Positions 7,839 through 63,685 of a DNA stretch of 64,000 nt are shown here, piece after piece. The stretch lies in the IMG/VR virus record IMGVR_UViG_3300034073_003542, positions 145,848 through 209,847 of that record. The stretch is one strand, 5' to 3'. The first letter of the stretch is position 1; the number at the start of each line of letters is the position of its first letter. Position numbers and translations under genes: made by a program. Under the pieces are notes generated by a model that was not told the DNA's origin, did no database searches, and was given only the letters and a program-made list of their open reading frames with translations.

Positions 7839-7845
7839 CATACTT

Positions 7846-7873
7846 ATTATAGCACAGGGATGGGGTTTGTCAA
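7846..7873 (-). promoter_or_regulatory. promoter TTGACA-N16-TATAAT
   Basis: perfect hexamers, 16-nt spacer. Confidence 0.8.
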
Positions 7874-22383: not shown

Positions 22384-23229
22384 ATGAAAAAAACAAAGAA
22401 ATGTAAACAGTGTGGAAAAAGAAAATCTATAGACAAATACTATAAACACAAGACTTGTAAAGATGGATATAGAGATATTTGTAAGATATGTATTAATAAA
22501 TTATCTAAAGAATATGTAGAGAAAAATAAAGAAAAAATTGCCCAACGACAAAAAAAATATAGAGAAAAAAATAAAGAAAAGCTTTCTCAACAAAGAAAAG
22601 ACTATAGAGAGAAAAATAAAGAAAAGGTCAAAAAACAAAAACAGGCCAACTATTTAAAACACAAAAATAAGACATTACAAAAAAGTAAAGAATATAAAGA
22701 AAAACTTAAAAAAGAAAATCCAGAAAAATTAAAATTATGGCGAAAAAATTATTGTATTAGACATAAAAATAAATTAAAAGAATATAAGCGAAACTATCAC
22801 CAAAAAAACAAAGTAAAAATAAGAAATATAAGGAATAAATATAGAAAATATAAATACGATTCAGATATTGGATATAGAATGCAAGAGAATATTAGGAGTA
22901 GAATGAGATATCTCTTGAAAGGATATTATAAAAGTAAAGCCACACTAGAATTATTAGGATGTTCGGACGATCAACTTAAAAAACATCTAGAAAAACAATT
23001 TGAGCCAAGTATGACTTGGGATAATTACGGATATTATGGGTGGCATATTGACCATATCAGACCATGTTCTAGTTTTGATTTATCTGATCTAGAACAACAA
23101 AAACAGTGCTTTCATTATACGAATTTACAGCCATTATGGGCAAAAGACAATTATATTAAAGGTAATAAGATACCTATTTCTTCCAGTGATGATCTTCATG
23201 GCCTGCCATTAAACACCCATACGGAATAA
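22384..23229 (+). CDS. HNH homing endonuclease with Lys-rich helical repeats
   Basis: N-terminal CxxC pairs, repeated YREKNKEK, C-terminal WHIDHIRP...NLQPLWAKDN; ATG at 22384. Confidence 0.85.
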   Translation: MKKTKKCKQCGKRKSIDKYYKHKTCKDGYRDICKICINKLSKEYVEKNKEKIAQRQKKYREKNKEKLSQQRKDYREKNKEKVKKQKQANYLKHKNKTLQKSKEYKEKLKKENPEKLKLWRKNYCIRHKNKLKEYKRNYHQKNKVKIRNIRNKYRKYKYDSDIGYRMQENIRSRMRYLLKGYYKSKATLELLGCSDDQLKKHLEKQFEPSMTWDNYGYYGWHIDHIRPCSSFDLSDLEQQKQCFHYTNLQPLWAKDNYIKGNKIPISSSDDLHGLPLNTHTE

Positions 23230-24553: not shown

Positions 24554-24599
24554 ACACCTCACTTAAACACAACCGAGCCAGGATTCGACACGATATCCT

Positions 24600-29936: not shown

Positions 29937-30008
29937 AGACCGCAGTTGGAATCGAACCAACAAATGCTGTTTTGCAGACAGCCACCAACGCCAATTGATT
30001 TTGCGGCC
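29937..30008 (-). tRNA. tRNA-Cys(GCA)
   Basis: GGCCGCA/TGCGGTC acceptor, U discriminator, loop CTGCAAA, TTCGA T loop. Confidence 0.9.
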
Positions 30009-48617: not shown

Positions 48618-49738
48618 TTATGTAATAAGTTTCTTCTCAGTGACGCCCAGGTGAACGGGCGAATCTTGGGATAGGTTATAGAAAATCCTAAGAGCTTTTT
48701 TTAGAGTCGCCAAATCTTCAAATAATCCTACGTCTGGGTCTATAAATTTCCCATCAGCATTATTAGAATTTATTGCTAATTTGAGCTTGCCACTTGGTCT
48801 TAAATAAAAGAGCGAGTCTTCTGTAGTTGTACAAAAAACATACTTAAATTCTTTTTCTGTATGGATAAGTTTTCCGTTTGTACCAAAAATATATGGATAT
48901 ACGGAAATATAAAATTCCCGAAAATACATAGTAGTTCCGTCAAACATAAATTTCTTTTTTAGTAATAGGTATATCTAGCACCACATTACTCTTATAAAAT
49001 AAAGAGAGGGCCGCTTCTATTTCAAAAAATTCATGAAAGGTATGTGTCGCTGCATCAATAATAATTCTAGGATTAGTTACTTCTCCCGCTTTACTTAAAT
49101 AACCCATTTCACACCAACAAAAATAATATTCATTAGTGGTCTCTCCCTCAGAATTATATGGGCCTGTGTATATCTCAAAATCTTTATATCTCCCAATCAT
49201 ATTAACTCCTTTTTGGTTCTTTGTATATGGGTGGGCGATCCATAATATTTAGCCAAAGTCTCTTCTACTGCTTCAATAGAAGGAAAATATGTTCTAATAC
49301 CTATTATAAGTTTTCCTTCCTCATCTAGATAAGTGTTAGATTGATTTGTTGTCGCCCAGTATAATGTGACACTATTTGTTTTTCCTAAATTGAATATTGA
49401 TACTCCCACCCAAAAGTCTTTATATCGTAATATGTTCATACTAATTCTTTGTGGGTTCTAGGAATATCTAATTTGATGGGCGAATTATAATAAAGAGAAA
49501 GAGCTGACTCTACTTCTTCCAGAGAATAGAACCTATGTATCTCTGCATTAAATGCGGTATCTAGTGACCCTTCCTTAGATAAGTGCTTGTAAAAATAAGT
49601 AGAAGGAGTTCCATAAAAATAAATAGTTGCCCAGTATAAAGTTCTAAAATCATTAATAGAGTCAATAGGAGGTCTACCAGAAGTTATTTCAAAATCTCTA
49701 AATTGAACTCTTATAAACATATCCATCCATTCTACCAT
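48618..49738 (-). CDS. four tandem paralogous small ORFs (fifth member at 46376-46636)
   Basis: shared [FY][RK][DE]F...[YH]L...G...E.AL..[YF]Y...T.K[EK][LI] pattern. Confidence 0.75.
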
Positions 49739-49872
49739 AAACCCAATGGGTTGTCAAACTCGCTGACTATCGCGCATGTTCCGAACTTATTAGTTTAGGA
49801 GGAACACGCCCACCCGTCTTTTTGGTGTACTATATTAGTGAATCAATATCTACCAATTAGGAGCACCCCCTT

Positions 49873-50202
49873 ATGGCCTTCAACTCTGCACCATCTGGTT
49901 ATTTTCCAAATATTAATGTAGGAGAAGTTGTAGGAGGAGTAACAGGTGTCTTTATTCCTTGGTCAGACTTAGAAGCTTTTGATACTTCTACTTCTGGAGA
50001 TATACGCCAATTAGCTTATGCTTTTAATCAAGGAATGTATAATGGATATTCTGGTTTAGCAACGGCAGATAAGCCTGACGAAATGACAATCAGACTCGCT
50101 AAAACTTTTCCAACTCCTGCTACTATTCGTCATACTTATACTAACATCTTCAATCTTGATTTTAATGCCGAACTAGTAATGACTCCGGAACCAACAGGCT
50201 AA
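49873..50202 (+). CDS. hypothetical protein, possibly late/virion
   Basis: AGGAG RBS; TGGTGTA motif upstream. Confidence 0.6.
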   Translation: MAFNSAPSGYFPNINVGEVVGGVTGVFIPWSDLEAFDTSTSGDIRQLAYAFNQGMYNGYSGLATADKPDEMTIRLAKTFPTPATIRHTYTNIFNLDFNAELVMTPEPTG

Positions 50203-50412
50203 AATGGATGAAAAAATTAAAAAACATATTCTAGAAATAGAACATAACATTTCTCAGATTCATAAGTTGTCTGAGTGTGTAGCTAATGTTTTAAATAATG
50301 AATGTGCCTTAATTAAGAATAATAATCCATTAGAAGATACAGAAAGTAAATGTAATTGTATTAAGCAGAACATTGCTAATGTTGAACAACTACTAGATGA
50401 AACAAAAAATAC

Positions 50413-50745
50413 ATGAAACTATTTGGATTTAATTGGGGACTTACCAAAAAATCGTCAGAAGAACTTTTTGGCGGACGCGACCCTCAATGGGATGGGGTTC
50501 GTAAGCAACATCTTAAAAAAGAAAATTTGTGCCAAGCTTGTTTGACTAAAGATAATTTAGAAGTACATCATATAATTCCTTTTCATTTAAGGCCAGACTT
50601 AGAACTAGATCCAGCAAATCTAATAACTTTGTGTGCTCAAAAATGTCATTTGTTATTTGGCCATCTAATGAATTATAAATCCTATAATAGTAATGTTATT
50701 GAAGACTGTAAAAAGATGCAAGAAAATATCAAAAATCGCCCTTGA
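50413..50745 (+). CDS. small HNH endonuclease
   Basis: CQAC, LEVHHIIP, NLITLC...CH motifs. Confidence 0.85.
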   Translation: MKLFGFNWGLTKKSSEELFGGRDPQWDGVRKQHLKKENLCQACLTKDNLEVHHIIPFHLRPDLELDPANLITLCAQKCHLLFGHLMNYKSYNSNVIEDCKKMQENIKNRP

Positions 50746-50769
50746 CACACGTTTTTCTTATGGTACAAT
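50742..50769 (+). promoter_or_regulatory. promoter TTGACA-N16-TACAAT
   Basis: hexamers with extended TG. Confidence 0.7.
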
Positions 50770-51553
50770 GGGTGGATGGAACAAGAATGGGCGGTTGTTA
50801 ATAAAGATAGCAATTCCGTTTTTCTAGATCGCTCATTTCCAACACAAGAAAAAGCTCAAGAAGCTATACTACTATATTCAGTATATTTTGTTATTCCTGA
50901 TGTTAAAATTATTCCAAATAATGAAGTTAAGATTACTTTAAAAACATTGTCATGAAAGAAGCGATTCCTATAAGTGTCTATTATTGCGCAGATAGAGACA
51001 TTTTTTGCTGGAAATTTATTCATTCCATAGGAAAGCCAGCATTTTATCCTTACCCAAAATATACAGACTTTCATAAGAAATGGATTGGGCGAAAAGAAGA
51101 ATTTCCTCCCCTACAAATAACAGAAAAAACATTAATATGATAGAAGGTATTCCACCCGATACTTATTGGGATGATGAACTAGATCTATTTTATCATATTT
51201 TTGAATTCTATGGACTACCCGCCAAATCATTTGAAAATATATATTTCACCCAAAAATGGATTGGACGAAAAGATGAATTTCCCAAACTGCCAAAAACTGA
51301 GAAAACTATAGTATGACACTAATACAATATTCAGAGTGGTTGTTTTTGGGCGGATTATTTTTATGTGTGTGGCCCATTATATATCTTTTAATCTTCAAAA
51401 AATTATCAGAAGACTTAATGATCGCCTCTTTCATACTAGGAGCAATCATAGCAAACATAGGATTCTGGGTTTCCTTAGTGAAATGGATTGTATGGTTAGC
51501 TATTATTTCTATTGAAAATCGCCCATAGAACTCTTTTCTGCGTAACCAACCCC

Positions 51554-51581
51554 TTGACAGGCCGGATTTTTTAGATATAAT
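51554..51581 (+). promoter_or_regulatory. promoter TTGACA-N16-TATAAT
   Basis: perfect hexamers. Confidence 0.75.
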
Positions 51582-54500
51582 AGGATGACAGCTAAGAGTC
51601 CTAAACATTTGGCTGACTATGAGCAACTAAAGCAAATCCGAAGGATCGGCTGGAACATCTGACTATAGGAATTTTTATGAAGAAAAATCATGACGAATTA
51701 GAAGTTTATCCAATAGGCACTCAAGTTCTTATGTCAACAATGGAAGGTACTATTATTGGTATTCAAATCAGACATAACAATTATGTCTTGTATGAAGTTA
51801 GTTATTTTGATAAGGGCGAAAAGAAAACTCAGTGGTTAGAATCTCTGGAGATTAATCCTGAAGTTAAAGATAAGAAAAAGATAGGATTCCTATAAGAGTC
51901 CTCAATAACTCGCTGACTACGAGCAACTGGGGCAAATCCGAAGGATAGGGAGAAACAAATTATGCAACTTCGTTGGTTACAAAATATTCTTCAATATTCT
52001 ACAATAGAAGTTGACGATAAGAATAATAGTAGAGAAGTCTGGCATGCGGTTCCCAGAGTAGAAGGGGACCAAATAGAAGTTGCTAGAAAAGTTATGCAGG
52101 AAGATAAGGAAGTACTTGATAAACTAGCCAAGAATTATTTGGGCGACTAATCAAGTGATCCTCAAATCTCGCTGACTATCATATTTTGGCTGACTACCGC
52201 CAACATTCCGAATCCGAAGGATTGGCTCAGACACGCCCATTATTGTCTGGCGCTGTCAAATATTTCCATCTTTTCGATAGTCTTAATGGGAATATAAACA
52301 ACAGAACCACCATCAATAACCATAATCAAATTAGGATTCTGACATCCTTCTGAGGGCGAGTCATAAATTTTTCGCCCACCGCCTTTTGTTACAATAAGAA
52401 CTTTTGGGTCTTTCATCTTTGAAACCAAATCAACAGCACTAATCAACATTTTAGCTCCTTATACTATATACTTGCGGCGAACTTTAAGAGAACAGATATT
52501 CTCTTTATAAATTTGGTCAAACAATTCTGTGTCTACCATTTCTGCGTCTAGAGATTCAAACATCCACTTAGGAATTTCAATATGGTGAAACTCCCATGTG
52601 TTGTTGTGGAATAGAACATAAACCTCGGCCATATATCGCATTATCTTAACCTATAAATTCCGTGATTTTCTTCAAATTCTTTCATATGATCAACAACAAT
52701 TTGACAAGCCATATCTTTTACATCTTCAAGATATTCTACTTCACCAAATTGTGACTCAAGTAAAACAATTAAGTCTTCCTGAATCTGTTCACTAATTTCT
52801 CTAATACTTTTACTCATCATCTTCTTCCTTTTCATAAAGATTACTCTCTAATGATTCCGCCCAATCTCTAACATTAGAATCGCGTATAAAATCAATAAGG
52901 GCATCACACGCCGCCGAGTTGTCTGACAGAAATACTTCGACCAGACTTCCAAAACGAAACCCATGAGGCTTATAGCCGAGAGCTTCAATGATTCTTTCCA
53001 AGTTTTTAAGGCCGCTATCGCCCTCAAAATTATGAATCTTTTCTTGATCCATAAACTCTTCAAGAAGTTCATTCATCATCTTCTTCTACTCCAAGTATTT
53101 CTGGATAATACTCTAAAATCTCTGTTTCAAGTTGTTTGTGCGTATATTCATCTTTATCTTTACTTAAATAATCATAAGCTAATGAAGCTAGAGTATCTAT
53201 ATCCATACCATCAATCATCTGTTGGATATATTCATCTTGAATCTTATCACGATTTTCTGCGTTTATCAACATTTTTTGCTCCGTGTGTACTGTACGAATC
53301 CTATTCTACCACCCTACTAAGGATTGTCAATAGTGGGCTTATTAGTATCGAAATATTGACAATTCACTAATTGGGTATGACAATAGTATCTATCGTATTC
53401 TATTCTAGACATATGTTCAATAGAATCATTAATAATAGAATCCCACTGCCAATCTTTTGGATTAGTATAAGTGTCATCAAATTCGATATTGAGCGTAACT
53501 ACACAGATTTTTTTCAAGTCACAACTCCCTTACTTTCCTACGCAACATTGACAATATCCACAAATCACACATAGACCAAAAATCAAGTATACCATAGACG
53601 CCTCCTTTGTCAAGTAATGTAACAGGGCCAGAAGCCACCATTGTACCACAGACGCCTGCTAGTCGCAAGTCGTTGGCATTACTAGACTTAGGTTAGGTCA
53701 TTCTTCTTGGAGGTTTGATGAAACTGCCCCTCATTCCTTTCAAACTGGACAACTTCTCTATAAGTAGGCACAGTTAGCTGTCCAAAATAAAGATCGCAGT
53801 CCCTCAATACTACTTCACCATTTCTTTTTAACAGAAAATTAGTTACATTATCAAGCGAGTACGGGTCTAATGCTCCTTCGTGAAGGGCAATTACCTCATA
53901 ATGAATAGTGTCGAATTGATATTGGGCGATTACAGTTTGCATTATGTCCCTTTCAAAAATTATAGAGAATACTCACAAAAAGATTTTAATGTATTATTAT
54001 ACACAGGAGAATGATAAACTCCAACACTCAACCCCCTTTGTTGATAAAAGACTCCCTTACGAAAGTCTATGGGGCCAATTTCGTGATCTATTTTTTGTAT
54101 AAAATCATTAGCATAATCTTCAGCCGCCCAATAATCAATAAATGACTTACAGTCTTCCACAGAATTGTCTCTTACTACAACAAAGGTATACATTATATTT
54201 CTCCTAAATAGTAATTAACCAAAGCCAAGCTACACAAACACCAAAAATAAGCGATATATCAGTTATCATTTATTTTCTCCATTAGTTTATCAAATTTTAT
54301 CTGACACTCTTCCATAGTTCCTTCCCATATAAAATGACCACCACAAAAAAACTCAATAGCCCCATCACACTCCTCATAAGAATCACACTGGAGAACTGGT
54401 CCCATTTCATTCATTATGGTGAATTTCATTTTTTTCTCCGTAGAGGGTTGGTTTTCTGGTTTTTCGCCCAAAACAATACTATTTTCTTTCTGCATAACCA

Positions 54501-55062
54501 AAGAGTCCCAAGGGGACGCAGACTATCCCAGACTATTCACTATACCACACAAAACCAAAAAGTCAAGGGGTCAGCCTAACCTTACTTTTCGTACAGTTTT
54601 AGAATTAGAGGATTTTATAATAGATATTCTACAATTATTTTTTCTAATCCTCATATTATAGCACCTCTGCCTACTATTATACCACAGACGCCCACCCGCC
54701 ACAAGTCTAGCATTATCAAGGGGTTACATCGAATCATTAGTCGCAATTTGGAAGGGGTCGAAACTAGTGATTGATTAGTAGGCAATATGTCATTTTGGCA
54801 GGGGGTTGCCATTTTGGCAGACGCGGTACAAAAGCTGCCATTTTGGCATACAGACTCAAATCCTCTAAGAGTCTTCAACTGGCTGACTGTGCCATATCTG
54901 CCGAATCTGAAAGATTGGGCTGGACAAAACTGTAATGTATGCTATGTGAGACGTTAAGTATGGTTAGTGTCTCATATAGATAACATTATGCCATTTTGGC
55001 AGGAGGCGTCCCCGGCCTGCCATTTTGGCAGTCGCCAAGCTGCCATTTTGGCACCCAGGAAT

Positions 55063-55097
55063 GAAAAGGGGGCCGCCAGCCTATGCCAGCAGCCCCC
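55063..55097 (-). terminator. intrinsic terminator downstream of the DUF932 gene
   Basis: GGGGGCTGCTGGC ATAG GCTGGCGGCCCCC followed by TTTT. Confidence 0.7.
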
Positions 55098-55125
55098 AAT
55101 TTAAACCAGGCGATTTTATTCGATC

Positions 55126-56076
55126 CTAGAGAGCGTTCGCAAACTCCAGAGCCGAAGTAAAGGCGTCCGAATTATCGTTCGCACCTTGACCGAACCAGAG
55201 CGAGTCGATCCGGTTGTCGGCGTTGCGACCCTTGGCATAGTTCAGGTATTCATTGACACCATTATATGCCGCCCACCAAGTTCCCTTGACACCGGGGAGC
55301 GACTGACGCGGACCTTCGATCCGGGTCATAATATCAGCGATGATATTCTTGGTACGAGTCGAGATGTCCTCGATAGGAGTTTTCTCAACACCCAAAACCA
55401 CCTTGACATAAGCATCGATGTCTCTTGCACTGAAATTCTTGGACGCAAGAAAGCGATACTGTTCAGCGGTCGCTTCAAACTGGACATTGATATTATCCAT
55501 AATGTCACGTACCTTTTCCAGATTGACTTTCTGCGAACGAGTATGTCGGATGCGAATAAGCTGAGAGCCAGAATCCTTGCTATGAGCCATAGCCATAGTG
55601 TTCGCACACACAACTCGGATGGGAGTATATCCCACGCGAATAGCGGTCGTACCATTGTGACTATTGGAAAGCAGGATGAACTTGCAGACAGTATCATCGC
55701 CAACAATTTCGGAGCAATCGCGGTTCAGTTGGGCAAGAACCCAAACCTTTTCGCCGTTATGGAGCGATCCGGCGGTATGCAGATTGCACTCGCCAGCATC
55801 CAGAAACGGCTGGAACCAATCGAAAGCGTCTTTATTCTGAAGTGGCACATAACGTGGGCCGACTACAGAGAAAATACGCCCATCGCTCACGCGATAGGTA
55901 GCCTTTTCCGGCAGAGCTTCGCCGTCAACAGTCTGAATAGCCTTCAGACCAACTTCCCAATTCAATCCCGACGCATCAATAGCGTCAGCAATAGTAATCT
56001 TGTCATCGACCTTATTGCCAAGACCATGCCAAGGGGTTTCACCAGCGAACATCATCGTTTCAACAGCAGCACTCAT
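55126..56076 (-). CDS. DUF932 family (phage/plasmid-like TIGR03299) protein
   Basis: ETPWHGLG, TAGSL.NG.KVW, NSHNG, TPIRVVCANT, IRHT, GTWWAAYN motifs. Confidence 0.9.
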   Translation of the reverse strand: MSAAVETMMFAGETPWHGLGNKVDDKITIADAIDASGLNWEVGLKAIQTVDGEALPEKATYRVSDGRIFSVVGPRYVPLQNKDAFDWFQPFLDAGECNLHTAGSLHNGEKVWVLAQLNRDCSEIVGDDTVCKFILLSNSHNGTTAIRVGYTPIRVVCANTMAMAHSKDSGSQLIRIRHTRSQKVNLEKVRDIMDNINVQFEATAEQYRFLASKNFSARDIDAYVKVVLGVEKTPIEDISTRTKNIIADIMTRIEGPRQSLPGVKGTWWAAYNGVNEYLNYAKGRNADNRIDSLWFGQGANDNSDAFTSALEFANAL

Positions 56077-56117
56077 CTTCGTTTCCTCTTCTTGTGGGTT
56101 ATCGTTCCGTTTCATGG

Positions 56118-56145
56118 ATTATACCAGAGCATTCGGGGGTGTCAA
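56118..56145 (-). promoter_or_regulatory. promoter TTGACA-N16-TATAAT
   Basis: perfect hexamers with TGG extension. Confidence 0.8.
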
Positions 56146-56255
56146 GGGTCTGGTTTGCGGAAAAATAAAGTTTTCGAGTCACTACTTTTGGCATGGGAGT
56201 TGCTGGGGCGTCTGCCATTTTGGCAGGCCCGGTAGGTGATCTGCCATTTTGGCAG

Positions 56256-56615
56256 TCACGCAACGGCTTCTTTTTCCAGTTCCTTAGAAAGCCTCTGAGG
56301 TTTATTCATCCAAGGTTGTGGAGCGATATTTATAAACCAATCTTGGATAGATGGAATAAATCCACAATCTTCTTGAACGTGCTGTTCTCCCACCCATCGA
56401 GTTGGGATTACCTTACCAGTAGAAAGAGTAATGGTATTACCAAATACTCTGGCACATTCATAGATACCCTGAGAATGATGTCGCAAAGCACGATGGCGAA
56501 AGTCACCAAACATTTCTTTAGAGGCATCAAACCATTCATGAATATCCATATAGTCAGCAACTTCTCCACCCCACTTCTTTACGGATGAAAGAGAATGATG
56601 ATAAGGATTAGACAT
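56256..56615 (-). CDS. DUF6915-like protein
   Basis: PYHH..SS..KWGG...H.WFD.SK...HRALRHH..GI pattern. Confidence 0.7.
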   Translation of the reverse strand: MSNPYHHSLSSVKKWGGEVADYMDIHEWFDASKEMFGDFRHRALRHHSQGIYECARVFGNTITLSTGKVIPTRWVGEQHVQEDCGFIPSIQDWFINIAPQPWMNKPQRLSKELEKEAVA

Positions 56616-56950
56616 TAGAGAATCTCCTCAAAATCGTTCCAAACTTCTTCACTTTCTTGACCAGACATAACCGCTGTCTCTTTTTCTACATCATACTCAA
56701 CAGTTCCATTTACATAAAACTCACCAGCAAAAGAGTAATATCTGTCATAAACAGGTTTAGAAAGTTGATCTGCAAGTTCTCCGTCGATACCTTCTCCGCC
56801 CCAAGCTGGCAACGTTCCAATAGGAAAACCCGTCTCTGATAGGAGTTGAATATTTTCAACACCACCTTCGTCTCCACCACCACTAAACTGAACTACTACC
56901 TTAGCAGCACCACGCTTACGAAGTTCTGCGAATATCTCTTTGCGATCCAT
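56615..56950 (-). CDS. DUF6878-like protein
   Basis: VVQFSGGGDEG motif; likely start MDRKEI. Confidence 0.55.
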   Translation of the reverse strand: MDRKEIFAELRKRGAAKVVVQFSGGGDEGGVENIQLLSETGFPIGTLPAWGGEGIDGELADQLSKPVYDRYYSFAGEFYVNGTVEYDVEKETAVMSGQESEEVWNDFEEIL

Positions 56951-57453
56951 TTCTTTTCTCCGGGTTATCGTTTCCTGTTCACTGATTATAGCATAGGTGC
57001 AGTGGCTGTCAACAGTTTTTTCGCTGGCTATCGTCATAATTTCGAATCTGGTAGATTGAGTGGAACATAATCGTTGGAGATAGAATATTCAAAAGCTTTT
57101 ATCTGATCTAGATTATCAATACTCAGAATAAGCTTTCCAGTTTTTCTAATTTGATTTTCTTGCCACTTTACATTAGCAGTAGCATTCTTGCTCATTCTCC
57201 AACCAGGCCATTGATGATCATTATATCTATTGAGAATAACAATCAGAGAATTTACATCGCCCCTAACATGGGCGTATTGAGCGAATGGAAATCCACCAGT
57301 TTTTTGGAATTTAAAAGTACTAGCTTTTGGTCCCTGAATTGTATTGATATTGATTTTTAATCTAGCGTCATTAATATGAACACTAGAAGCAATACATATA
57401 GACGAGAAGTGTATCGAGAAGAGAATGAAGAGAGTTAAGATGGGTTTCATAAG

Positions 57454-57527
57454 TAGCTGCGGTGAGGGTCGAACTCACACTGTTCGGATTTTAAGTCCGA
57501 TTTCTCTGCCTGTTGGAATACGCAGCC
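57454..57527 (-). tRNA. tRNA-Leu(TAA), short variable loop
   Basis: TCGGA CTTAAAA TCCGA anticodon arm. Confidence 0.9.
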
Positions 57528-57531
57528 ATAA

Positions 57532-57606
57532 TACCGGGAACTGGATTTGAACCAGCACTGTTATGCTTCTAAGGCATATGTCTCCTGCCAATTGGACTAC
57601 CCCGGC
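57532..57606 (-). tRNA. tRNA-Leu(TAG), short variable loop
   Basis: TATGC CTTAGAA GCATA. Confidence 0.9.
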
Positions 57607-57614
57607 GTGTCAAG

Positions 57615-57688
57615 TAGGAAGTATTGGAGTCGAACCAATCTTTTGAGTACCTTATAAGAGTACGTGCCACTACCGGCGGCAACTTCCC
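57615..57688 (-). tRNA. tRNA-Ile(TAT)
   Basis: GTACT CTTATAA GGTAC. Confidence 0.85.
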
Positions 57689-57727
57689 ATGTTTTTTATT
57701 ATACACCGACGCTGGAGAAAAGTCAAG

Positions 57728-57800
57728 TAGACCGGGTGAGAGTCGAACTCACGATAGGCGGATTAAAAGTCCGCTACTTTAGCCGCTAAGTTACCGATCC
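57728..57800 (-). tRNA. tRNA-Lys(TTT)
   Basis: GCGGA CTTTTAA TCCGC. Confidence 0.92.
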
Positions 57801-57908
57801 ATGTTCAGTCAAGTATACCATACCCTTCTCTGTTGTCAACCCCTCAATTTTGTGTCTGCCATTTTGGCAGCCTCGCTACTCCGCCTGTCAAATTGGCAGT
57901 GTCTGAAG

Positions 57909-57979
57909 TGAGTGATGAAAGAATCGAACTTTCGTCGAGATGTTAAGAGCATCCTATAATACCATTATACTAATCACCC
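57909..57979 (-). tRNA. tRNA-Lys(CTT)
   Basis: GGATG CTCTTAA CATCT. Confidence 0.9.
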
Positions 57980-57983
57980 GAAA

Positions 57984-58068
57984 TGCAGAGTTGGGGAGTC
58001 GAACCCTATCCTTCCGTCCAGTTCATTAAGGAACGAGCTTAGAACGCACGTACTGGCTGCAACCCTGC
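57984..58068 (-). tRNA. non-canonical D-armless tRNA-Arg(TCT)
   Basis: GCAGGGT/ACTCTGC acceptor, ACGTGC GTTCTAA GCTCGT anticodon arm, TTCGACT T loop; own promoter at 58079-58106. Confidence 0.65.
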
Positions 58069-58107
58069 GTGTCGATACATTATACATTACCGAATCGAAC
58101 TGTCAAG

Positions 58108-58197
58108 CGAAGGACAAGAGGATTGAACTCTCACCGGGTTTTTAATCCGGCCTACTTTTCCAAAGTAGTGCAGCAAACCAATATCTGCCTATCCTTC
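58108..58197 (-). tRNA. tRNA-Ser(GGA)
   Basis: CTACT TTGGAAA AGTAG; long variable arm. Confidence 0.9.
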
Positions 58198-58212
58198 ATA
58201 GAACCAAACAAG

Positions 58213-58298
58213 CGGAGGCGAAAGGAATCGAACCTTCGAGGGTTTTTTAGGCCCCAGCTATTTTCAAGATAGTGTCCTCGACCTACCGGACCACCTCC
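58213..58298 (-). tRNA. tRNA-Ser(TGA)
   Basis: CTAT CTTGAAA ATAG; long variable arm. Confidence 0.9.
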
Positions 58299-58311
58299 AT
58301 ATATTATCAAG

Positions 58312-58396
58312 CGGAAGTAGCAGGGTTCGAACCTGCAAGCCTTTTTAGGGGCCAACTCTTTAGCAAAGAGCTTCCTCACCAACTCGGATTACTTCC
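58312..58396 (-). tRNA. tRNA-Ser(GCT)
   Basis: GCTCT TTGCTAA AGAGT; long variable arm. Confidence 0.9.
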
Positions 58397-58401
58397 ATTA
58401 G

Positions 58402-58483
58402 CACTAGAAGTAGGACTCGAACCTACAGTGTCTTTCGACGGGAGATTAACAGTCTCCTGCGTTTACCATTCCGCCACTCTAGT
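58402..58483 (-). tRNA. tRNA-Asn(GTT) with long variable arm
   Basis: GGAGA CTGTTAA TCTCC; extra GTC GAAA GAC arm. Confidence 0.85.
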
Positions 58484-58497
58484 ATGATTATCGTCAG

Positions 58498-58570
58498 GGT
58501 GGCTAATGGGAGTCGAACCCATATCACTTGATTCACAGTCAAGCCGCTTCACCAGTTAGCGTATAACCAC
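58498..58570 (-). tRNA. tRNA-His(GTG)
   Basis: CTTGA CTGTGAA TCAAG; C discriminator. Confidence 0.9.
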
Positions 58571-58572
58571 AG

Positions 58573-58643
58573 TTCCGGGGCTACGATTCGAACGTAGAAT
58601 AAATGGTCCAAAGCCATTTGTGATACCATTTCACTACCCCGGA
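58573..58643 (-). tRNA. tRNA-Gln(TTG)
   Basis: AATGG CTTTGGA CCATT. Confidence 0.9.
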
Positions 58644-58898
58644 ATGTTAAGCGTCTCTATGCGATCCGCTTAGTTTTTTACTTTCTCTCAAATACTCAGC
58701 AATCTCTATGAGCTTCTTTCCAAGTTCTTCAATGTTGTCTGCTTCTTTTTTAGTAAGCCACGAAGCAACGTGCATGAAAAGATAATTCTCTTTACCTTTG
58801 GTTCTCACTCCAGCAACCCCGACAGACGGGTTATTAAACTCTTGTGGAAAGTTTCTCATCATGCACCTAGTTTAGCATAACTTCAAGAAGTTGTCAAG

Positions 58899-58971
58899 TG
58901 GAGCAAGTCAGAGTCGAACTGACATGGCGAGATTTTCAGTCTCGTGCCGTGACCGCGTAGGCTATTGCTCC
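58899..58971 (-). tRNA. tRNA-Phe(GAA)
   Basis: CGAGA CTGAAAA TCTCG. Confidence 0.9.
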
Positions 58972-58982
58972 ATAATTATCAG

Positions 58983-59056
58983 TCCTCAATGTAGGCATCG
59001 AACCCACTACCTTCTCGGTGTAAACGAGACGCTCTAGCCGAATGAGCTAATTGAGG
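58983..59056 (-). tRNA. tRNA-Val(TAC)
   Basis: TCTCG TTTACAC CGAGA. Confidence 0.9.
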
Positions 59057-59061
59057 ATATA

Positions 59062-59133
59062 TCTAGAATGTCGAAATCGAATCGCTCTTGCTTGCCCCAA
59101 ACAAGCCGTGCAAACCATTACACTTCATTCTAG
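59062..59133 (-). tRNA. tRNA-Pro(TGG)
   Basis: GCTTG TTTGGGG CAAGC; weak T stem. Confidence 0.8.
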
Positions 59134-59153
59134 TTATTTAACAGTCTTGAACA

Positions 59154-59225
59154 AGTTGATGATAGGAGTTGAACCTACAACTAACTTCATACCAAGAAGC
59201 TACTCTACCATTGAGTTACATCAAC
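59154..59225 (-). tRNA. tRNA-Thr(GGT)
   Basis: GCTTC TTGGTAT GAAGT. Confidence 0.9.
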
Positions 59226-59228
59226 ATA

Positions 59229-59299
59229 AGCCAATACGAGGAATCGAACCCCGGTGTTCTCATTACAAGTGAGACGTAATTCCACTATACGATACTGGC
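59229..59299 (-). tRNA. tRNA-Thr(TGT)
   Basis: TCTCA CTTGTAA TGAGA. Confidence 0.9.
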
Positions 59300-59305
59300 A
59301 AATTA

Positions 59306-59379
59306 TGCGTCTATCCAGATTCGAACTGGAACATTCAGTTTGGAAGACTGACAGGCTAGCCGTTGAACCTCATAGACGC
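59306..59379 (-). tRNA. tRNA-Gly(TCC)
   Basis: TCAGT CTTCCAA ACTGA. Confidence 0.9.
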
Positions 59380-59385
59380 GTTTAG

Positions 59386-59457
59386 TGACCCTACTGAGAA
59401 TCGAACTCAGATTGCTAGATTGAAAGTCTAGATTCCTAACCATTAGAAGATAGGGCC
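59386..59457 (-). tRNA. tRNA-Glu(TTC)
   Basis: CTAGA CTTTCAA TCTAG. Confidence 0.9.
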
Positions 59458-59496
59458 ATATCATTTCATTATACCAACTCTTTTCATTCTGTCAAG

Positions 59497-59567
59497 TGGA
59501 CCGTAAGAGAATCGAACTCTTATTTGAAGCTTGCAAAGCTACCGTTCTCCCGTTGAACTAACAGCCC
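59497..59567 (-). tRNA. tRNA-Ala(TGC)
   Basis: AGC TTTGCAA GCT; G3:U70. Confidence 0.9.
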
Positions 59568-59574
59568 ATATCTA

Positions 59575-59648
59575 TCCGCTAGGAAAGAGTCGAACTTTCG
59601 TCTCGAACTTATCAGGTTCGCATTCTAAAACCGTTGAAATACTAGCGG
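59575..59648 (-). tRNA. tRNA-Ile(GAT)
   Basis: CGAAC CTGATAA GTTCG. Confidence 0.9.
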
Positions 59649-59655
59649 TCAAAAG

Positions 59656-59741
59656 TCCCCCGTAGAAGAATTGAACTACCCGGCAGCCACCTATTAATTT
59701 AATGCCCCGTGTTTTACAGACACAGAATAGGAGTACGAGGG
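59656..59741 (-). tRNA. non-canonical D-armless tRNA-Tyr(GTA)
   Basis: CCCTCGT/ACGGGGG acceptor, CTGTGT CTGTAAA ACACGG anticodon arm, TTCAATT T loop. Confidence 0.7.
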
Positions 59742-59763
59742 AAATTATCATCATACATATCAG

Positions 59764-59836
59764 CGATTCTACCGGGAATCGAACCCGGATTTCCAGATGG
59801 ACAGTCTAGCGTCGTGAACCGTTGGACCATAGAACC
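59764..59836 (-). tRNA. tRNA-Asp(GTC)
   Basis: CTAGA CTGTCCA TCTGG. Confidence 0.88.
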
Positions 59837-59842
59837 GTTAAG

Positions 59843-59914
59843 TGGGTCGTGAATGATTTGCACATTCGTCTCTGGTTTCGTAGACCAGTATACTATCTAC
59901 TATACTAACAACCC
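59843..59914 (-). tRNA. tRNA-Arg(ACG)
   Basis: CTGGT CTACGAA ACCAG. Confidence 0.88.
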
Positions 59915-59920
59915 ATATTA

Positions 59921-60003
59921 TGTCGGCGGCGGGATTTGAACCACTTTAATGCGATTTCAAGTTTATGAGACTTGCGAGGACGACCAGACTCCTCTACGCC
60001 GAA
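59921..60003 (-). tRNA. tRNA-Met(CAT), initiator-like, with T-stem insertion
   Basis: CAAGT CTCATAA ACTTG; 1:72 mismatch. Confidence 0.75.
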
Positions 60004-60004
60004 A

Positions 60005-60075
60005 TGCCTCTTGCTTGAATTGAACAAGCGTCAACTTCGTATGAAAAAGTTAGATTACCACTATCCTAAAGAGGC
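60005..60075 (-). tRNA. tRNA with CAT anticodon (elongator Met or Ile2)
   Basis: ACTTT TTCATAC GAAGT. Confidence 0.8.
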
Positions 60076-60080
60076 GAAAG

Positions 60081-60151
60081 CATACTCACAAGGATTCGAG
60101 CCTTGACCAACTGTTTTGGAGACAGTGATGCTACCGTTACACCATGAGTAT
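60081..60151 (-). tRNA. tRNA-Trp(CCA)
   Basis: ACTGT CTCCAAA ACAGT; G discriminator. Confidence 0.88.
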
Positions 60152-60172
60152 GTGTTTTTTATGAAACCCGAA

Positions 60173-60184
60173 TTGTCAAAGAGC
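60173..60184 (-). promoter_or_regulatory. boxA-like antitermination signal ahead of the tRNA operon
   Basis: GCTCTTTGACAA, close to rrn boxA TGCTCTTTAACA. Confidence 0.55.
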
Positions 60185-60547
60185 GAAACTATTTGTACTC
60201 TCTGATATTCCCCAAGAGAAGGCTCAAGGGGTTCTCACCCCGAGCACAAAGGGGCAAGAATTAGCCTTCGCAGGCTGGATTTTGGCGATATCCAAAGCCT
60301 GAATGACTACGGACGTTCCACGATGTTTTCGTGGTATCAATCGTGTTGTAGTTAATTCTGGACATTTGAAATTCGTTACCCTTAATGTTGTTTTTCCTGA
60401 CCTCTACCATTATAGCCGACCCGACACCCGTTGTCAAGTGGTCCGTTTCTTTCCTTACACCATTATTATAAAAGTCGTCTAATATTTCTGCCATTATGGC
60501 AGTCTCGCTACCCGCCCTGCCATTTTGGCAGTTTAGAAAAGTCTACG

Positions 60548-60578
60548 AAAAAACCCGCAGGATTCAAAGTCCCACGGG
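60548..60578 (-). terminator. intrinsic terminator
   Basis: CCCGTGGGA ctttgaa TCCTGCGGG followed by T6. Confidence 0.75.
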
Positions 60579-60782
60579 CTTCTCGCCTCAATAGCGGTAA
60601 TGAGTCTCTATTTTATACTAAGCTAACCGCTATTCCGCAGTCGGTCAAGACGTAAGATTGTTGACTAGACTAGCTTAGGCAAAGTTGCGCATCCTTTGCA
60701 TTTTCTACGCAAGACGGAATGGATACCGTCCTGCCGCTTTGGGCCTAAAGTCTGTTTATTCTCGCCCAAACGAGCCGCTGAT

Positions 60783-61073
60783 TCACTCAGCCGCAGCTTC
60801 CGCAGGAGCTTCAAGGTTCGGAGCCTTGACCTTCTTCGGATTGGCCGAATCGCCAGCCTGCTCCGCAGTCTCACCCGTCACACGAGCACGCCACACCTTG
60901 TAGCCCTGCTCCGTAAACGTCTTGACTGCACCAGCCTTGACGCCAATGTTCTCAACCGAATCACCAAACCGCTCGTCCAGAAAATCCGCAATCGCCTGAG
61001 CAACCGCTTCACGATCAACGCTACCAGCGGCAGCAACCAGACTCACATCAAACGCACACTTTTCACGCACCAT
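60783..61073 (-). CDS. small Ala-rich protein, probably highly expressed
   Basis: GGAG RBS, own promoter near 61124-61151, GC-richer codon usage. Confidence 0.7.
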   Translation of the reverse strand: MVREKCAFDVSLVAAAGSVDREAVAQAIADFLDERFGDSVENIGVKAGAVKTFTEQGYKVWRARVTGETAEQAGDSANPKKVKAPNLEAPAEAAAE

Positions 61074-63685
61074 TGCTATTTACTCCAAAAGACTATCGTT
61101 TCCAATCACTCACTACTACAACCATTATAGCAGCGTTTTACCACTTGTCAAGTCACATGAGCGAGTTTTGTTATTTGTGCTCTCGTCAGCGTCTTGTCTT
61201 GTGATACATGGATTATACCATACACTTCGTGTTAGTCAAGAGGGTAGGTCAAAAATCTTTTGTCTCAAACGGCGACGGCCTTTTTGGCACAGCGTTTGCT
61301 GTCGCGGTGTATGCTGCCATTTTGGCAGGCCTGGTAGCGAAGCTGCCATTTTGGCAGCCTAGTAATCTATTGATTCTGGATCAAAGTTTTCAATAATACT
61401 AGCTATATTATTTAGTGTCTCTGTTGCGTTTTCGCCACAAAAAGATTCGTCACCACATCGATCCCAGGTACGTTCTACTTCTGTATTGCGAATCATGTCA
61501 GCTAATACAGCACGGTCTTCCACAGCTATCTTACTGAGTACTTCTTCTTGTTCTATTGTTAATCTTATCATGATATTATACCGAGAAATTCATCTCCACA
61601 CACATATCAATAATCTCTTGAGCAGTAATATTGTGCTCTTTGATTGTGTTAGCAATTTCTTCTTGAGTTTTTTGGCTCATAAGAGCCATTCTGTTCCTAA
61701 TCGAAATAATTACTTTGAGAATTGCTTTGTTGCGTTCGCTACACATCATTTATTTCCGTATACGTATTTGTGGATTCGTTTTGATGCCTGCATATCTCGC
61801 CTTTTGAGTTCACCGTGGCAATACAGGATTTCGTCCGTGTAATAACCCACGTTCTCGCCATCAGGCATTGCAGCAATAACCTCGCGGCAATCTTGGATAG
61901 TGTATTCCAGTTCACTTTCCGACATCTTCTTTACTTTCCGCATATAAGCGGCGTGATCCATAATCTTTTTCATATTGGTATTATACCACAAGGAAATCGT
62001 TTGTCAAGTGCTCCTTATTTTGGCTGACTACGACCACTAAAACCGAATCCGAAGGATTGGCCGAGACAAGGGGAAGCCATAGCCCTTCATCAAAAGATTT
62101 GGAGTCTTTCGAAGGTTGCAATAAGGGCGGGTTTTCTGATTCCCTGTTCTCGACCAAATATTACCTATTCGTTATCGACAACACCCACATAGACCGCAAA
62201 CTACGCATAGAGTGAAAATACAATATACCATACTTTTCTCCTAGTGTCAAGTGGCCCAAAACCACATTATACCAGAAGGGCGGTTGTCCACAAGTGTTTG
62301 AGATATCTAGGGTTACGTTGGGTCTGCCTTTTTGGCAGCGAGGGCAGAGTGTCTGCCATTTTGGCAGTTACACAATTACTTCTACTTTAGATAGAATGTC
62401 TGAGGAAATTTCACTATAACATTCCCTAATAGTTTTACATTCCCCAATTATACTATGATCCCTATCATTCCACCATTGGTAAATCCGCCCAACTTTCTCA
62501 ACGTGGTAGCCGTACTGTTCGGCAAAAATCTGTAGTTTTCGTAATTGCATCTTATTGTCCGTGGAAAAGATATAAGCCAAATGAAAAAATCATCACAGAC
62601 ATTATCATATCAAGTGCCGGATATTTAGCCTCTTTAGGACTGATAGTAAATATCAGTAGTTGCCCAACAATCCACCCGATATTCATAGCGACAAGCGAGC
62701 TAATGCTAAATGTAATCATTTTTCATTCCAGTCGTTGAAACACACAGTACAAATTAAGCAATTCATTCCACAAATCATCGTATTACCAATCAAATATTGA
62801 TAACTAGGACTATTCATAGAAAAAATAGCAATGAGAGAAGTGACAACGAAACACACATATCGAAGCATTTTTGTATTCATATTTGTCCTTTATACCAATA
62901 GTTTATTGACTAGGCAATTCGCCCCAAACTTCTTTATTGCGTCAGTTTCGGCAGCTTGTTGACAAAACGCCAAAACATAACCGACAAAACGACCTTCCTG
63001 CACAACTCTGTAAGTGATTTCTAGCATAATAGGATTATATCATAATGGTTGGAGTTGTCAATAGGCTTATTCATCCATTATCCATTTTCCAAGTTTTTGT
63101 GTTTTTCTGCCAAGTCCCTTGCCAAGTCTGTAGCTCGTAGATTGCTGATCTGCTGGCTTAAAGATAATATACCAAATAAAGCCAAACACCAAAATCGCAC
63201 CTAATACTTCCATTATACTAAATCGCCTTTCTTTTTTTTATTTATTATTTATATGTATTCTACTCAGAAACGTCACCAAATAACTCATCCCAATCAGACA
63301 CAGAAAATCCTGTTAGTAGTAGCTCTCGTTCGTCTGCTGTTAAATATGGAAAACAGTGCTGTATAGCCTTTTCTCCATTACAAAAATCTACAAAATCTTC
63401 CTTATTGACTACCATAGTGAACGGCACGCCATCCCGACTACTGCCCATGAATGTAACATCCCCAGAATTATCACATTCGTACACATGCACATATTCACTT
63501 AGACCATAGCACTTACGTTTGCAATTAGTGACAAGCATCGTAGCACCTCATGTTGTTTAGCAGTAACGGAATTATACCATATGGATACACCATGTCAAGC
63601 TCTATGCCATTTTGGCAGTGCCTCGACCGAAACTGCCAGATTGGCAGTAAGCCGTAGCTCACCACCGATCTGGAGTCGGATTTTA

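What the first reader, a model, noticed from the sequence alone, without database searches (positions are those of the whole stretch)
49762..62061. Dispersed bipartite element: GCTGACT box plus a GAA-triloop hairpin 22-23 nt downstream, with covariation
Seen: copies at 51612, 51912, 52189, 54882, 62023 (degenerate at 49762, possibly 48110), all on the plus strand regardless of flanking gene direction. The core is AATCC GAA GGATT; the 54882 copy has the compensatory AATCT GAA AGATT. The spacer varies in sequence but not length. Established: C-GNA-G triloops are unusually stable in single-stranded DNA and are used by N4 virion RNA polymerase promoters and some priming signals. Inference: an ssDNA-hairpin recognition site (primase, phage polymerase or HUH nuclease) or a small RNA motif.
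Basis: partly seen in the sequence, partly recalled or inferred. Interest (0 to 1): 0.7.

Follow-up and report, generated by a model that had tools for sequence, protein, structure and literature searches.

The report
Phage gene-boundary hairpin cassette
The repeated box-plus-hairpin is a real, previously undescribed signal that an uncultured group of giant phages places between their early genes, tRNAs and promoters, most likely to mark where one transcription unit ends and the next begins.

Summary
The 209,847-bp phage genome has five full copies, all in this window and all on the + strand. There are also two decayed copies.

The element belongs to a large family: about 190 distinct copies in more than 100 uncultured viral contigs. 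Complete relatives of about 230 kb carry 6-7 copies each, on one strand, within about 15 kb. It is absent from Rfam, from cultured phages and from the papers searched.

The motif strand is almost always opposite to the tRNA and protein genes. Read on the gene strand, the element starts 0-5 nt after a tRNA, a small RNA or an ORF. In two thirds of copies it ends about 15 nt before a near-consensus sigma-70 promoter.

A subclass extends the hairpin into a textbook terminator, with G.U pairs on the gene strand only. Homology between related phages breaks at the element. No phage RNA polymerase, HUH nuclease, DnaG-type primase or recombinase gene was found.

Best reading: a unit-boundary cassette like the PeSLs of T4-like phages, but with an invariant 8-mer and a weak hairpin that is probably recognised by a factor.

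One feature stays unexplained. Two pentamers (NNSCA) 9 nt apart covary by identity, and this is stronger than the hairpin covariation.

The parts
62015..62069 (+). Copy E, the best copy (box GCTGACTA, pentamers GACCA/AACCG, hairpin AATCC-GAA-GGATT, tail ending AC). On the - strand it follows a short promoter-driven unit, and its hairpin is followed by UUUU.
   Evidence: Covariance model 67.4 bits, E 2.6e-15; sequence read on the - strand.
61980..62007 (-). Consensus sigma-70 promoter (TTGACA-16-TGnTATAAT). Its -35 lies 15 nt beyond the box of copy E and it fires away from the element, towards the pistol ribozyme and the tRNA array.
   Evidence: 12 of 12 consensus match. The same arrangement is seen in 69 of 110 copies, with spacing peaking at 13-16 nt.
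54874..54927 (+). Copy D, with the compensatory AATCT-GAA-AGATT stem and box GCTGACTG. It lies between - strand genes, 140 nt beyond a canonical terminator, and is flanked by three TGCCAAAATGGCA repeats on each side.
   Evidence: 48.4 bits; context.
52181..52234 (+). Copy C, between convergent gene blocks, 6 nt past the stop of the - gene 52240-52449. The box is duplicated 18 nt upstream, at 52171-52177.
   Evidence: 57.7 bits.
51904..51958 (+). Copy B, between two + strand genes. Its tail supplies the ribosome-binding site of the + gene 51962-52150. The hairpin is shortened (GGAT-A).
   Evidence: 57.0 bits; coding scores.
51604..51658 (+). Copy A, in the 5' leader of the + gene 51677-51895, about 15 nt downstream of the start point of a consensus + strand promoter (51554-51581). 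Its outermost stem pair is mismatched (GGATC).
   Evidence: 54.0 bits; promoter 12 of 12.
49754..49807 (+). Decayed copy. The box GCTGACTA is kept 4 nt from the -35 of the - strand promoter 49729-49757; the hairpin is replaced.
   Evidence: 18.1 bits, E 0.037.
57015..57068 (+). Decayed copy. It overlaps the junction of two - strand ORFs and abuts the - strand promoter 56985-57012. It keeps an AATCT/AGATT-type stem; the box has one or two changes.
   Evidence: 24.5 bits, E 7.5e-4.

Best explanation
The element is a transcription-unit boundary cassette that works in the orientation of the genes, which is the - strand of this window.

Read on that strand it is: GU, five variable bases, C, a weak 5-bp hairpin (AAUCC-UNC-GGAUU) extended by one C-G pair, two pentamers UGSNN 9 nt apart, then the invariant UAGUCAGC, then an A/U-rich stretch.

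Shown:
- It begins 0-5 nt after a tRNA, a small RNA or an ORF stop.
- In about two thirds of copies it ends about 15 nt before the -35 of a near-consensus sigma-70 promoter. In others it ends a few bases before the next ribosome-binding site.
- It occurs only in the roughly 15-kb region of small ORFs and tRNAs.
- Related phages differ by modules whose homology breaks at or inside it.

Inferred:
- The hairpin half closes the upstream unit. It would form or protect the RNA 3' end, acting as a terminator, attenuator or processing site. The stem is only about -4 kcal/mol and its sequence is conserved rather than just its pairing, so it probably needs a protein that recognises it.
- The box half belongs to the downstream unit.
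- As a conserved patch of about 55 nt, the element also serves as the crossover point for module shuffling.

Copies A-C here would then be three tandem stops for - strand read-through into a small convergent + operon. The identity between the two pentamers is not explained by this model.
For: - 271 box-bearing copies have 418 tRNAs within 3 kb, all on the opposite strand. About 45 copies have a tRNA 3' end 0-5 nt beyond the tail, and three fill inter-tRNA spacers.
- Flanking genes called by coding potential are antisense to the motif in 149 copies and sense in 7.
- Long ORFs on the gene strand stop within 25 nt in 42 copies, 12 of them at a TAA inside the stem.
- 69 of 110 copies have a TTGACA-N16-18-TATAAT-like promoter on the gene strand, with spacing peaking at 13-16 nt. 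Only 4 have a promoter in the motif's own direction.
- The 15 copies of the long-hairpin subclass fold 6 kcal/mol better on the gene strand in 15 of 15 cases (-11 to -26, most below -20 kcal/mol). Most of those listed run on into a U-rich stretch such as UUUGGUUUU.
- In at least 35 relatives a promoter-driven structured RNA of about 105 nt ends in the element.
- Copy E follows a promoter-driven unit of about 150 nt, and UUUU follows its hairpin.
- Mosaic pairs have one flank at 85% identity or more and the other at 45% or less, with breakpoints at the left edge, in the hairpin or at the right edge.
- Complete relatives have 6-7 copies on one strand within about 15 kb.
- No locus has copies on both strands.
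- PeSLs are described as stem-loop plus AT-rich stretch plus sigma-70 early promoter, sitting at module boundaries (PMC2839356, PMC4122927).
Against: - The common hairpin is too weak for an intrinsic terminator and has no U tract: -4.4 kcal/mol as RNA, equal on both strands.
- Some copies sit between two tRNAs or directly before a ribosome-binding site with no room for a promoter, so transcription must pass through them.
- Copy D lies 140 nt after a separate canonical terminator.
- Wobble counts in the short stem do not pick a strand: 7 against 3, and most of the 7 come from the subclass.
- The G-N-A loop has a known structural rationale (a sheared G.A pair) only on the motif strand (own knowledge).
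- The greater folding stability of the gene strand over the whole motif may simply reflect its G+U richness.
- Copies A and B are transcribed in the motif's own sense from a consensus promoter.
- No expression data could be found.
- The identity covariation of the pentamers has no role in the model.
Confidence: 0.5

Rival explanations
1. Single-stranded DNA signal on the motif strand. The C-GNA-G mini-hairpin extrudes or forms on the strand that is the template for the flanking genes. An N4-like polymerase, a primase or a nuclease reads it. The two identical pentamers would serve a start-and-realign step.
For: - The loop is GNA in 82% of copies, with G first in 95% and a C-G closing pair. This is the unusually stable DNA triloop (own knowledge).
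- Strand use is strict even where genes are inverted, as at copies A and B.
- The motif strand is the template strand, so an N4-type start would yield gene-sense RNA.
- Identity covariation at a 9-nt period is what a realignment step would need.
Against: - The genome has no T7/N4-type or multisubunit RNA polymerase, Y1 HUH nuclease or DnaG zinc ribbon. The giant ORF is a tape measure protein.
- The loop centre is a pyrimidine in about 45% of copies (GTA 56, GCA 13 and others), whereas N4 promoters need a purine there (own knowledge).
- Sigma-70 promoters already serve the region.
- The hairpin is worth only about -2.5 kcal/mol as DNA.
- The subclass shows G.U selection on the other strand.
- Copies are confined to 15 kb, unlike lagging-strand priming sites.
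Confidence: 0.15
2. Double-stranded DNA operator. The invariant 8-mer and the 5-3-5 palindrome are binding sites for a phage or host transcription factor that controls the adjacent early promoter.
For: - Spacing to the -35 is fixed at 13-16 nt in many copies, which places the box near -55.
- The sequence itself is conserved, not just the pairing.
- A second 5-3-5 palindrome, TGCCAAAATGGCA, is dispersed in the same regions, often upstream of promoters and in pairs 29 bp apart.
Against: - About 40% of copies have no adjacent promoter. These include high-scoring copies followed directly by a ribosome-binding site and a start codon, and copies between tRNAs.
- Paired changes in the two stem arms outnumber single changes.
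- The subclass evolves a long RNA-type stem.
- The pentamers differ between copies of one genome, so no single protein could read them.
Confidence: 0.15
3. RNA element on the motif strand: a nut-like leader (box plus hairpin) or a signal that stops antisense transcripts.
For: - Copy A lies about 15 nt after the start point of a consensus promoter, and copy B lies in the next leader, both in the motif's sense.
- The box-spacer-hairpin order and the GNA loop recall boxA/boxB (own knowledge).
- The spacer is C-rich and G-poor, as Rho-binding sites are.
Against: - Only 4 of 110 copies have a promoter in that direction, and only 7 of 188 have a sense neighbour.
- Elsewhere such an RNA would be antisense to tRNAs and genes.
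- The box is not a boxA match (own knowledge), and no Rfam family matches.
Confidence: 0.1
4. The element has no function of its own. It would be a selfish or passively spread repeat that persists because recombination copies it along with gene cassettes.
For: - Homology breaks at the element.
- The box is duplicated in tandem at copy C and in L010.
- Decayed copies exist.
Against: - The 8-mer is invariant, the stem changes by compensatory pairs, and the pentamers stay identical across about 190 diverged copies from many samples.
- Position and orientation relative to gene ends and promoters are fixed.
Confidence: 0.05

Closest known systems
PeSLs (promoter-early stem-loops) of T4-like phages RB49/phi1, PST and nt-1 (PMC2839356, PMC4122927)
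   Same: Both are small composite cassettes made of a stem-loop, an AT-rich stretch and a strong sigma-70-type early promoter. Both are repeated in one orientation in regions of small ORFs and tRNAs, and both sit at the boundaries of modules exchanged between related phages. In PeSLs the crossovers were mapped in or beside the stem-loop.
   Different: PeSL stems are G/C runs that terminate well, and each is conserved only within a close phage pair. Here the stem is weak and A/U-rich, with a conserved sequence and triloop. An invariant 8-mer and two identity-covarying pentamers lie between the stem and the promoter. A third of copies have no promoter. The same sequence is shared by more than 100 diverged contigs. 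The host phage is not T4-like.
Rho-independent terminators
   Same: The position is the same, directly after tRNAs, small RNAs and ORFs. The subclass has long stems of -20 to -26 kcal/mol followed by U-rich stretches on the gene strand.
   Different: The common form has a stem of -4.4 kcal/mol and no U tract, and it carries a conserved box 20-28 nt downstream.
RNase III processing sites of the phage T7 early region
   Same: Both are conserved intergenic hairpin signals, in one orientation between early genes, that would leave a 3' hairpin on the upstream RNA (own knowledge).
   Different: This element has no double-stranded stretch of about 20 bp that RNase III could use. Cleavage here has not been tested.
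N4 virion RNA polymerase hairpin promoters
   Same: Both have a 5-bp stem with a 3-nt loop closed by C-G, on the template strand of the neighbouring genes.
   Different: This genome has no such polymerase gene. The loop centre is often a pyrimidine, and sigma-70 promoters are present.
Lambda-type nut sites (boxA plus boxB)
   Same: Both are bipartite: a conserved single-stranded box, a spacer, then a short hairpin with a G-started, A-rich loop.
   Different: Nut sites lie on the sense transcript just downstream of an early promoter. Only copy A and a few others do that here. The box sequence also differs from boxA.
REP/BIME elements with RAYT, and IS200/IS605 ends
   Same: Both are dispersed intergenic hairpins next to a short conserved word. 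Half of the copies here read CTAC at the end of the box.
   Different: The genome has no Y1 HUH gene. The element uses a single orientation, is confined to a 15-kb region and occurs only in viral contigs.

Membership tests
PeSL-type terminator/promoter cassette | Stem-loop followed by an AT-rich stretch and a sigma-70-type early promoter on the same strand | tested here: met
   69 of 110 copies, with spacing peaking at 13-16 nt. In the window: copy E with promoter 61980-62007, and decayed copies at 49754 and 57015.
PeSL-type terminator/promoter cassette | Lies in a hyperplastic region of small ORFs, at boundaries of modules that differ between related phages | tested here: met
   The cluster is confined to about 15 kb with tRNAs and small ORFs. 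Mosaic breakpoints fall at the element.
PeSL-type terminator/promoter cassette | The stem-loop is an effective transcription terminator | tested here: inconclusive
   The common stem is -4.4 kcal/mol without a U tract. The subclass has -20 to -26 kcal/mol stems with U-rich tails. No assay was possible.
N4-type hairpin promoter | 5-7-bp stem with a 3-nt loop on the template strand | tested here: met
   5-bp stem and 3-nt loop in 165 copies. The motif strand is the template for the flanking genes.
N4-type hairpin promoter | Purine at the centre of the loop (own knowledge of the N4 promoters) | tested here: not met
   Loops are GAA 60, GTA 56, GCA 13, GGA 7 and others.
N4-type hairpin promoter | A cognate single-subunit virion RNA polymerase is encoded | tested here: not met
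   PF00940 gave no hit, though its control search also found nothing. There are no Rpb1 or Rpb2 domains. The only giant ORF (5102 aa) is a tape measure protein.
REP/RAYT or IS200/IS605 HUH site | A Y1 HUH transposase or RAYT gene in the genome | tested here: not met
   PF01797 gave no hit, while its control found it in 6 of 14 genomes.
Rho-independent terminator | Stable G+C-rich stem followed directly by a U tract | tested here: not met
   Not met for the common form. Met only for the 15-copy subclass, and partly for copy E, which has UUUU.
Lambda-type nut site | Lies on the sense transcript shortly downstream of an early promoter | tested here: not met
   4 of 110 copies have a promoter in the motif's direction. 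149 copies are antisense to their neighbours.
Any Rfam 15 family | Covariance-model match | tested here: not met
   No hit to the element at gathering score or at E up to 10, on either strand.

The most novel reading that the evidence does not exclude
The element is a new kind of strand-specific nucleic-acid signal, and its core is not the hairpin but the two pentamers that must be identical. The pentamers are 9 nt apart, which is the length of a transcription hybrid. Such a signal would work by a realignment step: a nascent RNA or primer made on one pentamer re-pairs with the other. That step could serve factor-dependent termination, priming on the hairpin-bearing template strand, or a programmed 9-nt skip. 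An as yet unrecognised phage or host protein would read the signal.
Probability: 0.15. Interest if true: 0.85.

Novelty: new variant of a known kind. Interest (0 to 1): 0.55.

Why it matters
- It gives a sequence-defined marker, and a covariance model, for the early or hyperplastic region of a widespread but uncultured group of 200-240-kb phages.
- It shows that composite stem-loop/promoter cassettes, so far described only in T4-like phages, exist elsewhere in a far more conserved form.
- That conservation makes it testable whether such cassettes have a dedicated protein partner.
- The identity covariation of two short words next to a hairpin is a constraint that ordinary RNA-structure or protein-site models do not predict. 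If it reflects a mechanism, that mechanism would be new.

Tried and rejected
- **Rfam.** Searches at gathering score and at E up to 10 gave nothing on the element.
- **Coding.** Reading it as coding sequence is ruled out by 1-nt length variants and by the lack of a start codon.
- **Known ribozymes.** Hammerhead, hairpin, twister and pistol-like readings do not fit. The cores do not match, and apart from the hairpin there is no complementary covariation.
- **A partner for the pentamers.** I looked for one within 200 nt. There was only a weak downstream excess (40 against 19), which one related small-RNA family explains. Pentamer-to-tail and pentamer-to-box pairing showed no covariation.
- **Slippage.** Homogenisation of a 9-nt tandem unit is rejected, because only 3 of the 9 positions show excess identity.
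- **Second hairpin.** A hairpin (GATTAG/CTAATC) as a general switch is rejected. It occurs only in a small subclass.
- **Wobble counts.** They do not decide the strand for the short stem.
- **Folding-energy asymmetry.** Over the whole motif it is confounded by base composition.
- **Expression data.** Four DNA metagenome runs hold most of the stretch (81-100% of its sampled words) and seven more hold a few per cent; no RNA run was listed. I therefore did not use read laying.
- **Bacterial and archaeal genomes.** The scan returned only chance matches, with 0 of 120 carrying the full motif.
- **Cultured phages.** No copy was found. There is also none in Tenacibaculum phage PTm5, the nearest RtcB relative.
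- **Chi-like or packaging-end role.** Rejected, because in complete relatives the cluster is internal.
- **Crude strand calls.** Calls from the longest ORF were too noisy, so I replaced them with coding-potential calls.

Full report
**What is there**

The window is the last 64 kb of a 209,847-bp viral record with 35% G+C.
- The bipartite pattern of the finding occurs five times in the whole genome. All five are in the window and on the + strand. There are none on the other strand and none for a backwards control pattern.
- The copies lie at 51604-51658 (A), 51904-51958 (B), 52181-52234 (C), 54874-54927 (D) and 62015-62069 (E).
- A covariance model (R1) built from relatives scores them at 48-67 bits.
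- The model also finds two decayed copies, at 49754-49807 and 57015-57068.
- No Rfam family matches on either strand, even at E up to 10.

**A large family**

- Two pattern scans of the viral collection and the model search recovered about 190 distinct copies in more than 100 contigs, from subsurface, lake, freshwater and marine samples.
- Five complete relatives of 229-244 kb hold 6-7 copies each, all on one strand, within about 15 kb.
- Of 140 loci with copies, 67 hold at least two, and none has copies on both strands.
- No copy turned up in cultured phage genomes, in Tenacibaculum phage PTm5, or among the 120 loci returned from bacterial and archaeal genomes, which were all chance hits.
- No paper in the library holds the core sequence.

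**Anatomy, written on the motif strand**

- An invariant GCTGACT, followed by A.
- Then Y and a pentamer NNSCA.
- Four variable bases, then a second pentamer NNSC(A/G).
- The stem-loop AATCC-GNA-GGATT, extended by a purine-purine mismatch and a C-G pair.
- About five variable bases, then an invariant AC.

The loop is GNA in 82% of 165 distinct copies, and G comes first in 95%. The stem is AATCC/GGATT in 127 copies, AACCC/GGGTT in 11 and AATCT/AGATT in 7. Paired changes beat every one of 500 shuffles.

The hairpin is weak: -4.4 kcal/mol as RNA and -2.3 to -2.8 as DNA, the same on both strands.

**The strongest signal is not the hairpin**

The three variable bases of the first pentamer equal those of the second.
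- Identity at the three positions is 70%, 80% and 93%, against 32%, 28% and 72% expected.
- Mutual information is 1.06, 0.72 and 0.59 bits, against about 0.3 for the stem pairs.
- Counting each distinct pair of triplets once, 12 of 48 are identical against 2.1 expected (0 of 20,000 shuffles).
- The other positions of the 9-nt unit show no excess identity, so slippage homogenisation does not explain it.
- I found no complementary partner within 200 nt.
- The pentamers differ between copies of one genome, so a single protein cannot be reading them.

This remains unexplained.

**Which strand matters**

- All 418 tRNA genes within 3 kb of 271 copies lie on the opposite strand.
- With genes called by coding potential, 149 copies have antisense neighbours and 7 have a sense neighbour. 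A and B of this window, with their near-identical relative, are the only copies with sense genes on both sides.
- On the gene strand the element starts 0-5 nt after a tRNA 3' end in about 45 copies, and three copies fill inter-tRNA spacers.
- Long ORFs stop within 25 nt in 42 copies, 12 of them at a TAA inside the stem.
- In at least 35 relatives a promoter-driven RNA of about 105 nt ends in the element. By eye, two of its helices change by compensatory pairs between subgroups; RNAalifold did not recover them on the alignment.
- Beyond the box, 69 of 110 copies have a near-consensus sigma-70 promoter on the gene strand that fires away from the element, with spacing peaking at 13-16 nt. Only four have a promoter in the motif's own direction.
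- Other high-scoring copies are followed within about 10 nt by a ribosome-binding site and a start codon.
- A subclass of 15 copies extends the hairpin to stems of -20 to -26 kcal/mol. These fold 6 kcal/mol better on the gene strand in every case, because their G.U pairs lie on that strand, and most of those listed run on into U-rich stretches such as UUUGGUUUU.

The subclass is the clearest evidence that the structure is selected as gene-strand RNA and that a terminator fits this position.

**In the window**

- The region from 49.7 to 63.1 kb carries at least 17 near-consensus promoters, nearly all on the - strand.
- E follows a unit of about 150 nt driven by the promoter at 62222-62250. On the - strand, UUUU follows its hairpin. 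Its box lies 15 nt from the -35 of promoter 61980-62007, which leads to the pistol ribozyme and the tRNA array.
- D lies between - strand genes, 140 nt after a canonical terminator.
- C lies 6 nt after the stop of the last gene of a - strand block.
- B and A follow C in the same direction, inside a small convergent + operon whose genes have good coding scores and a consensus + promoter at 51554-51581.

Read on the - strand, C, B and A are three boundary signals in series facing that operon. A and B also have slightly damaged stems. Read on the + strand, A and B are leaders, so a motif-sense role cannot be excluded for these two.

**Mosaicism**

Many pairs of copies from different phages share one flank at 85% identity or more while the other flank is unrelated. 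The breaks fall at the left edge, in the hairpin or at the right edge. The tail tends to travel with the upstream gene, and the pentamers and box tend to travel with the promoter side.

This is how PeSLs behave in T4-like phages, where crossovers were mapped in or next to the stem-loop (PMC2839356, PMC4122927).

- The genome gives no hit for a Y1 HUH nuclease, a DnaG zinc ribbon, tyrosine or serine recombinases, or multisubunit RNA polymerase domains. The controls rang for each of these.
- It gives no hit for a T7/N4-type polymerase either. That control found nothing in any genome, so this negative is weak.
- The 5102-aa ORF is a tape measure protein.
- The loop centre is a pyrimidine in nearly half of the copies.

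The ssDNA reading keeps some weight for three reasons. The GNA loop has a structural rationale only on the motif strand. That strand is the template of the neighbouring genes. And identical words at a 9-nt period are what a realignment step would need.

**Verdict**

The element is real, conserved and undescribed. It is most likely a unit-boundary cassette of the PeSL kind, read on the gene strand. Its weak, sequence-conserved hairpin probably needs a protein. Its box and identical pentamers have no known counterpart. No expression data were available, so the molecular step (termination, processing, or binding to DNA) is inferred, not shown.

Noticed in passing
window 54788-63617, - strand: A second dispersed repeat, the 5-3-5 palindrome TGCCAAAATGGCA. 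It has 16 copies (0.17 expected), all on the - strand, often in pairs 29 nt apart. Three copies lie on each side of copy D, and several lie upstream of early promoters. The repeat is also present in 32 related loci, where checked on the strand opposite to the motif.
   Followed up: partly
window 60703-60775, - strand: A pistol self-cleaving ribozyme (Rfam RF02679, 60.6 bits against a gathering score of 34.5) sits between promoter 61980-62007 and the tRNA array. Pistol hits also occur in relatives L007 and L035, on the tRNA strand.
   Followed up: partly
window 57453-60151, - strand (plus 29937-30008): An array of 24 tRNA genes. Several are directly followed by a consensus sigma-70 promoter for the next tRNA (the ...CCAC-TTGACA junctions).
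   Followed up: partly
L006:3790-3905 (- strand) and at least 34 other related loci; not in the window: A conserved RNA of about 105 nt with its own sigma-70 promoter, which ends in the element. A closing helix and a second helix appear by eye to change by compensatory pairs between subgroups, though RNAalifold did not recover them. One loop reads ACAAUGAUAUCAAA and another hairpin reads GYC-GAGUAU-GGC. It has no Rfam match.
   Followed up: partly
window 62070-62215, - strand: A short unit of about 150 nt between promoter 62222-62250 and copy E, holding only 15-17-codon ORFs. Its 3' part (GGGCUAUGGCUUCCCC) resembles sequence upstream of the element in L019 and L067. It may be a small RNA or a micropeptide gene.
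   Followed up: no
window 23174-24562 and 19133-20158, - strand: An RtcB-type RNA ligase (nearest cultured relative is Tenacibaculum phage PTm5, 54% identity) and a second RNA ligase. Together with the large tRNA set and the ribozyme, this suggests an RNA repair or processing theme.
   Followed up: partly
window 55126-57037, - strand: Three adjacent genes with DUF932, DUF6915 and DUF6878 domains. A strong canonical terminator follows at 55068-55097.
   Followed up: no
window 50413-50745, + strand: An HNH endonuclease gene inside the small + strand block that carries copies A-C. This block is the only place in the family where genes run in the motif's direction on both sides of a copy.
   Followed up: no
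genome 19652-34960 (L086), outside the window: A 5102-aa ORF with a phage minor-tail (tape measure) domain, an unusually long tape measure protein. The genome has a + strand arm (0-43 kb) and a - strand arm (45-210 kb).
   Followed up: partly
genome 54760-57627 (L088:760-3627), outside the window: A 955-aa ORF with weak intein-splicing and LAGLIDADG hits, so it may be an intein-bearing gene. The DNA polymerase appears split into two adjacent ORFs (L088:4197-5834 and 6697-8592).
   Followed up: no
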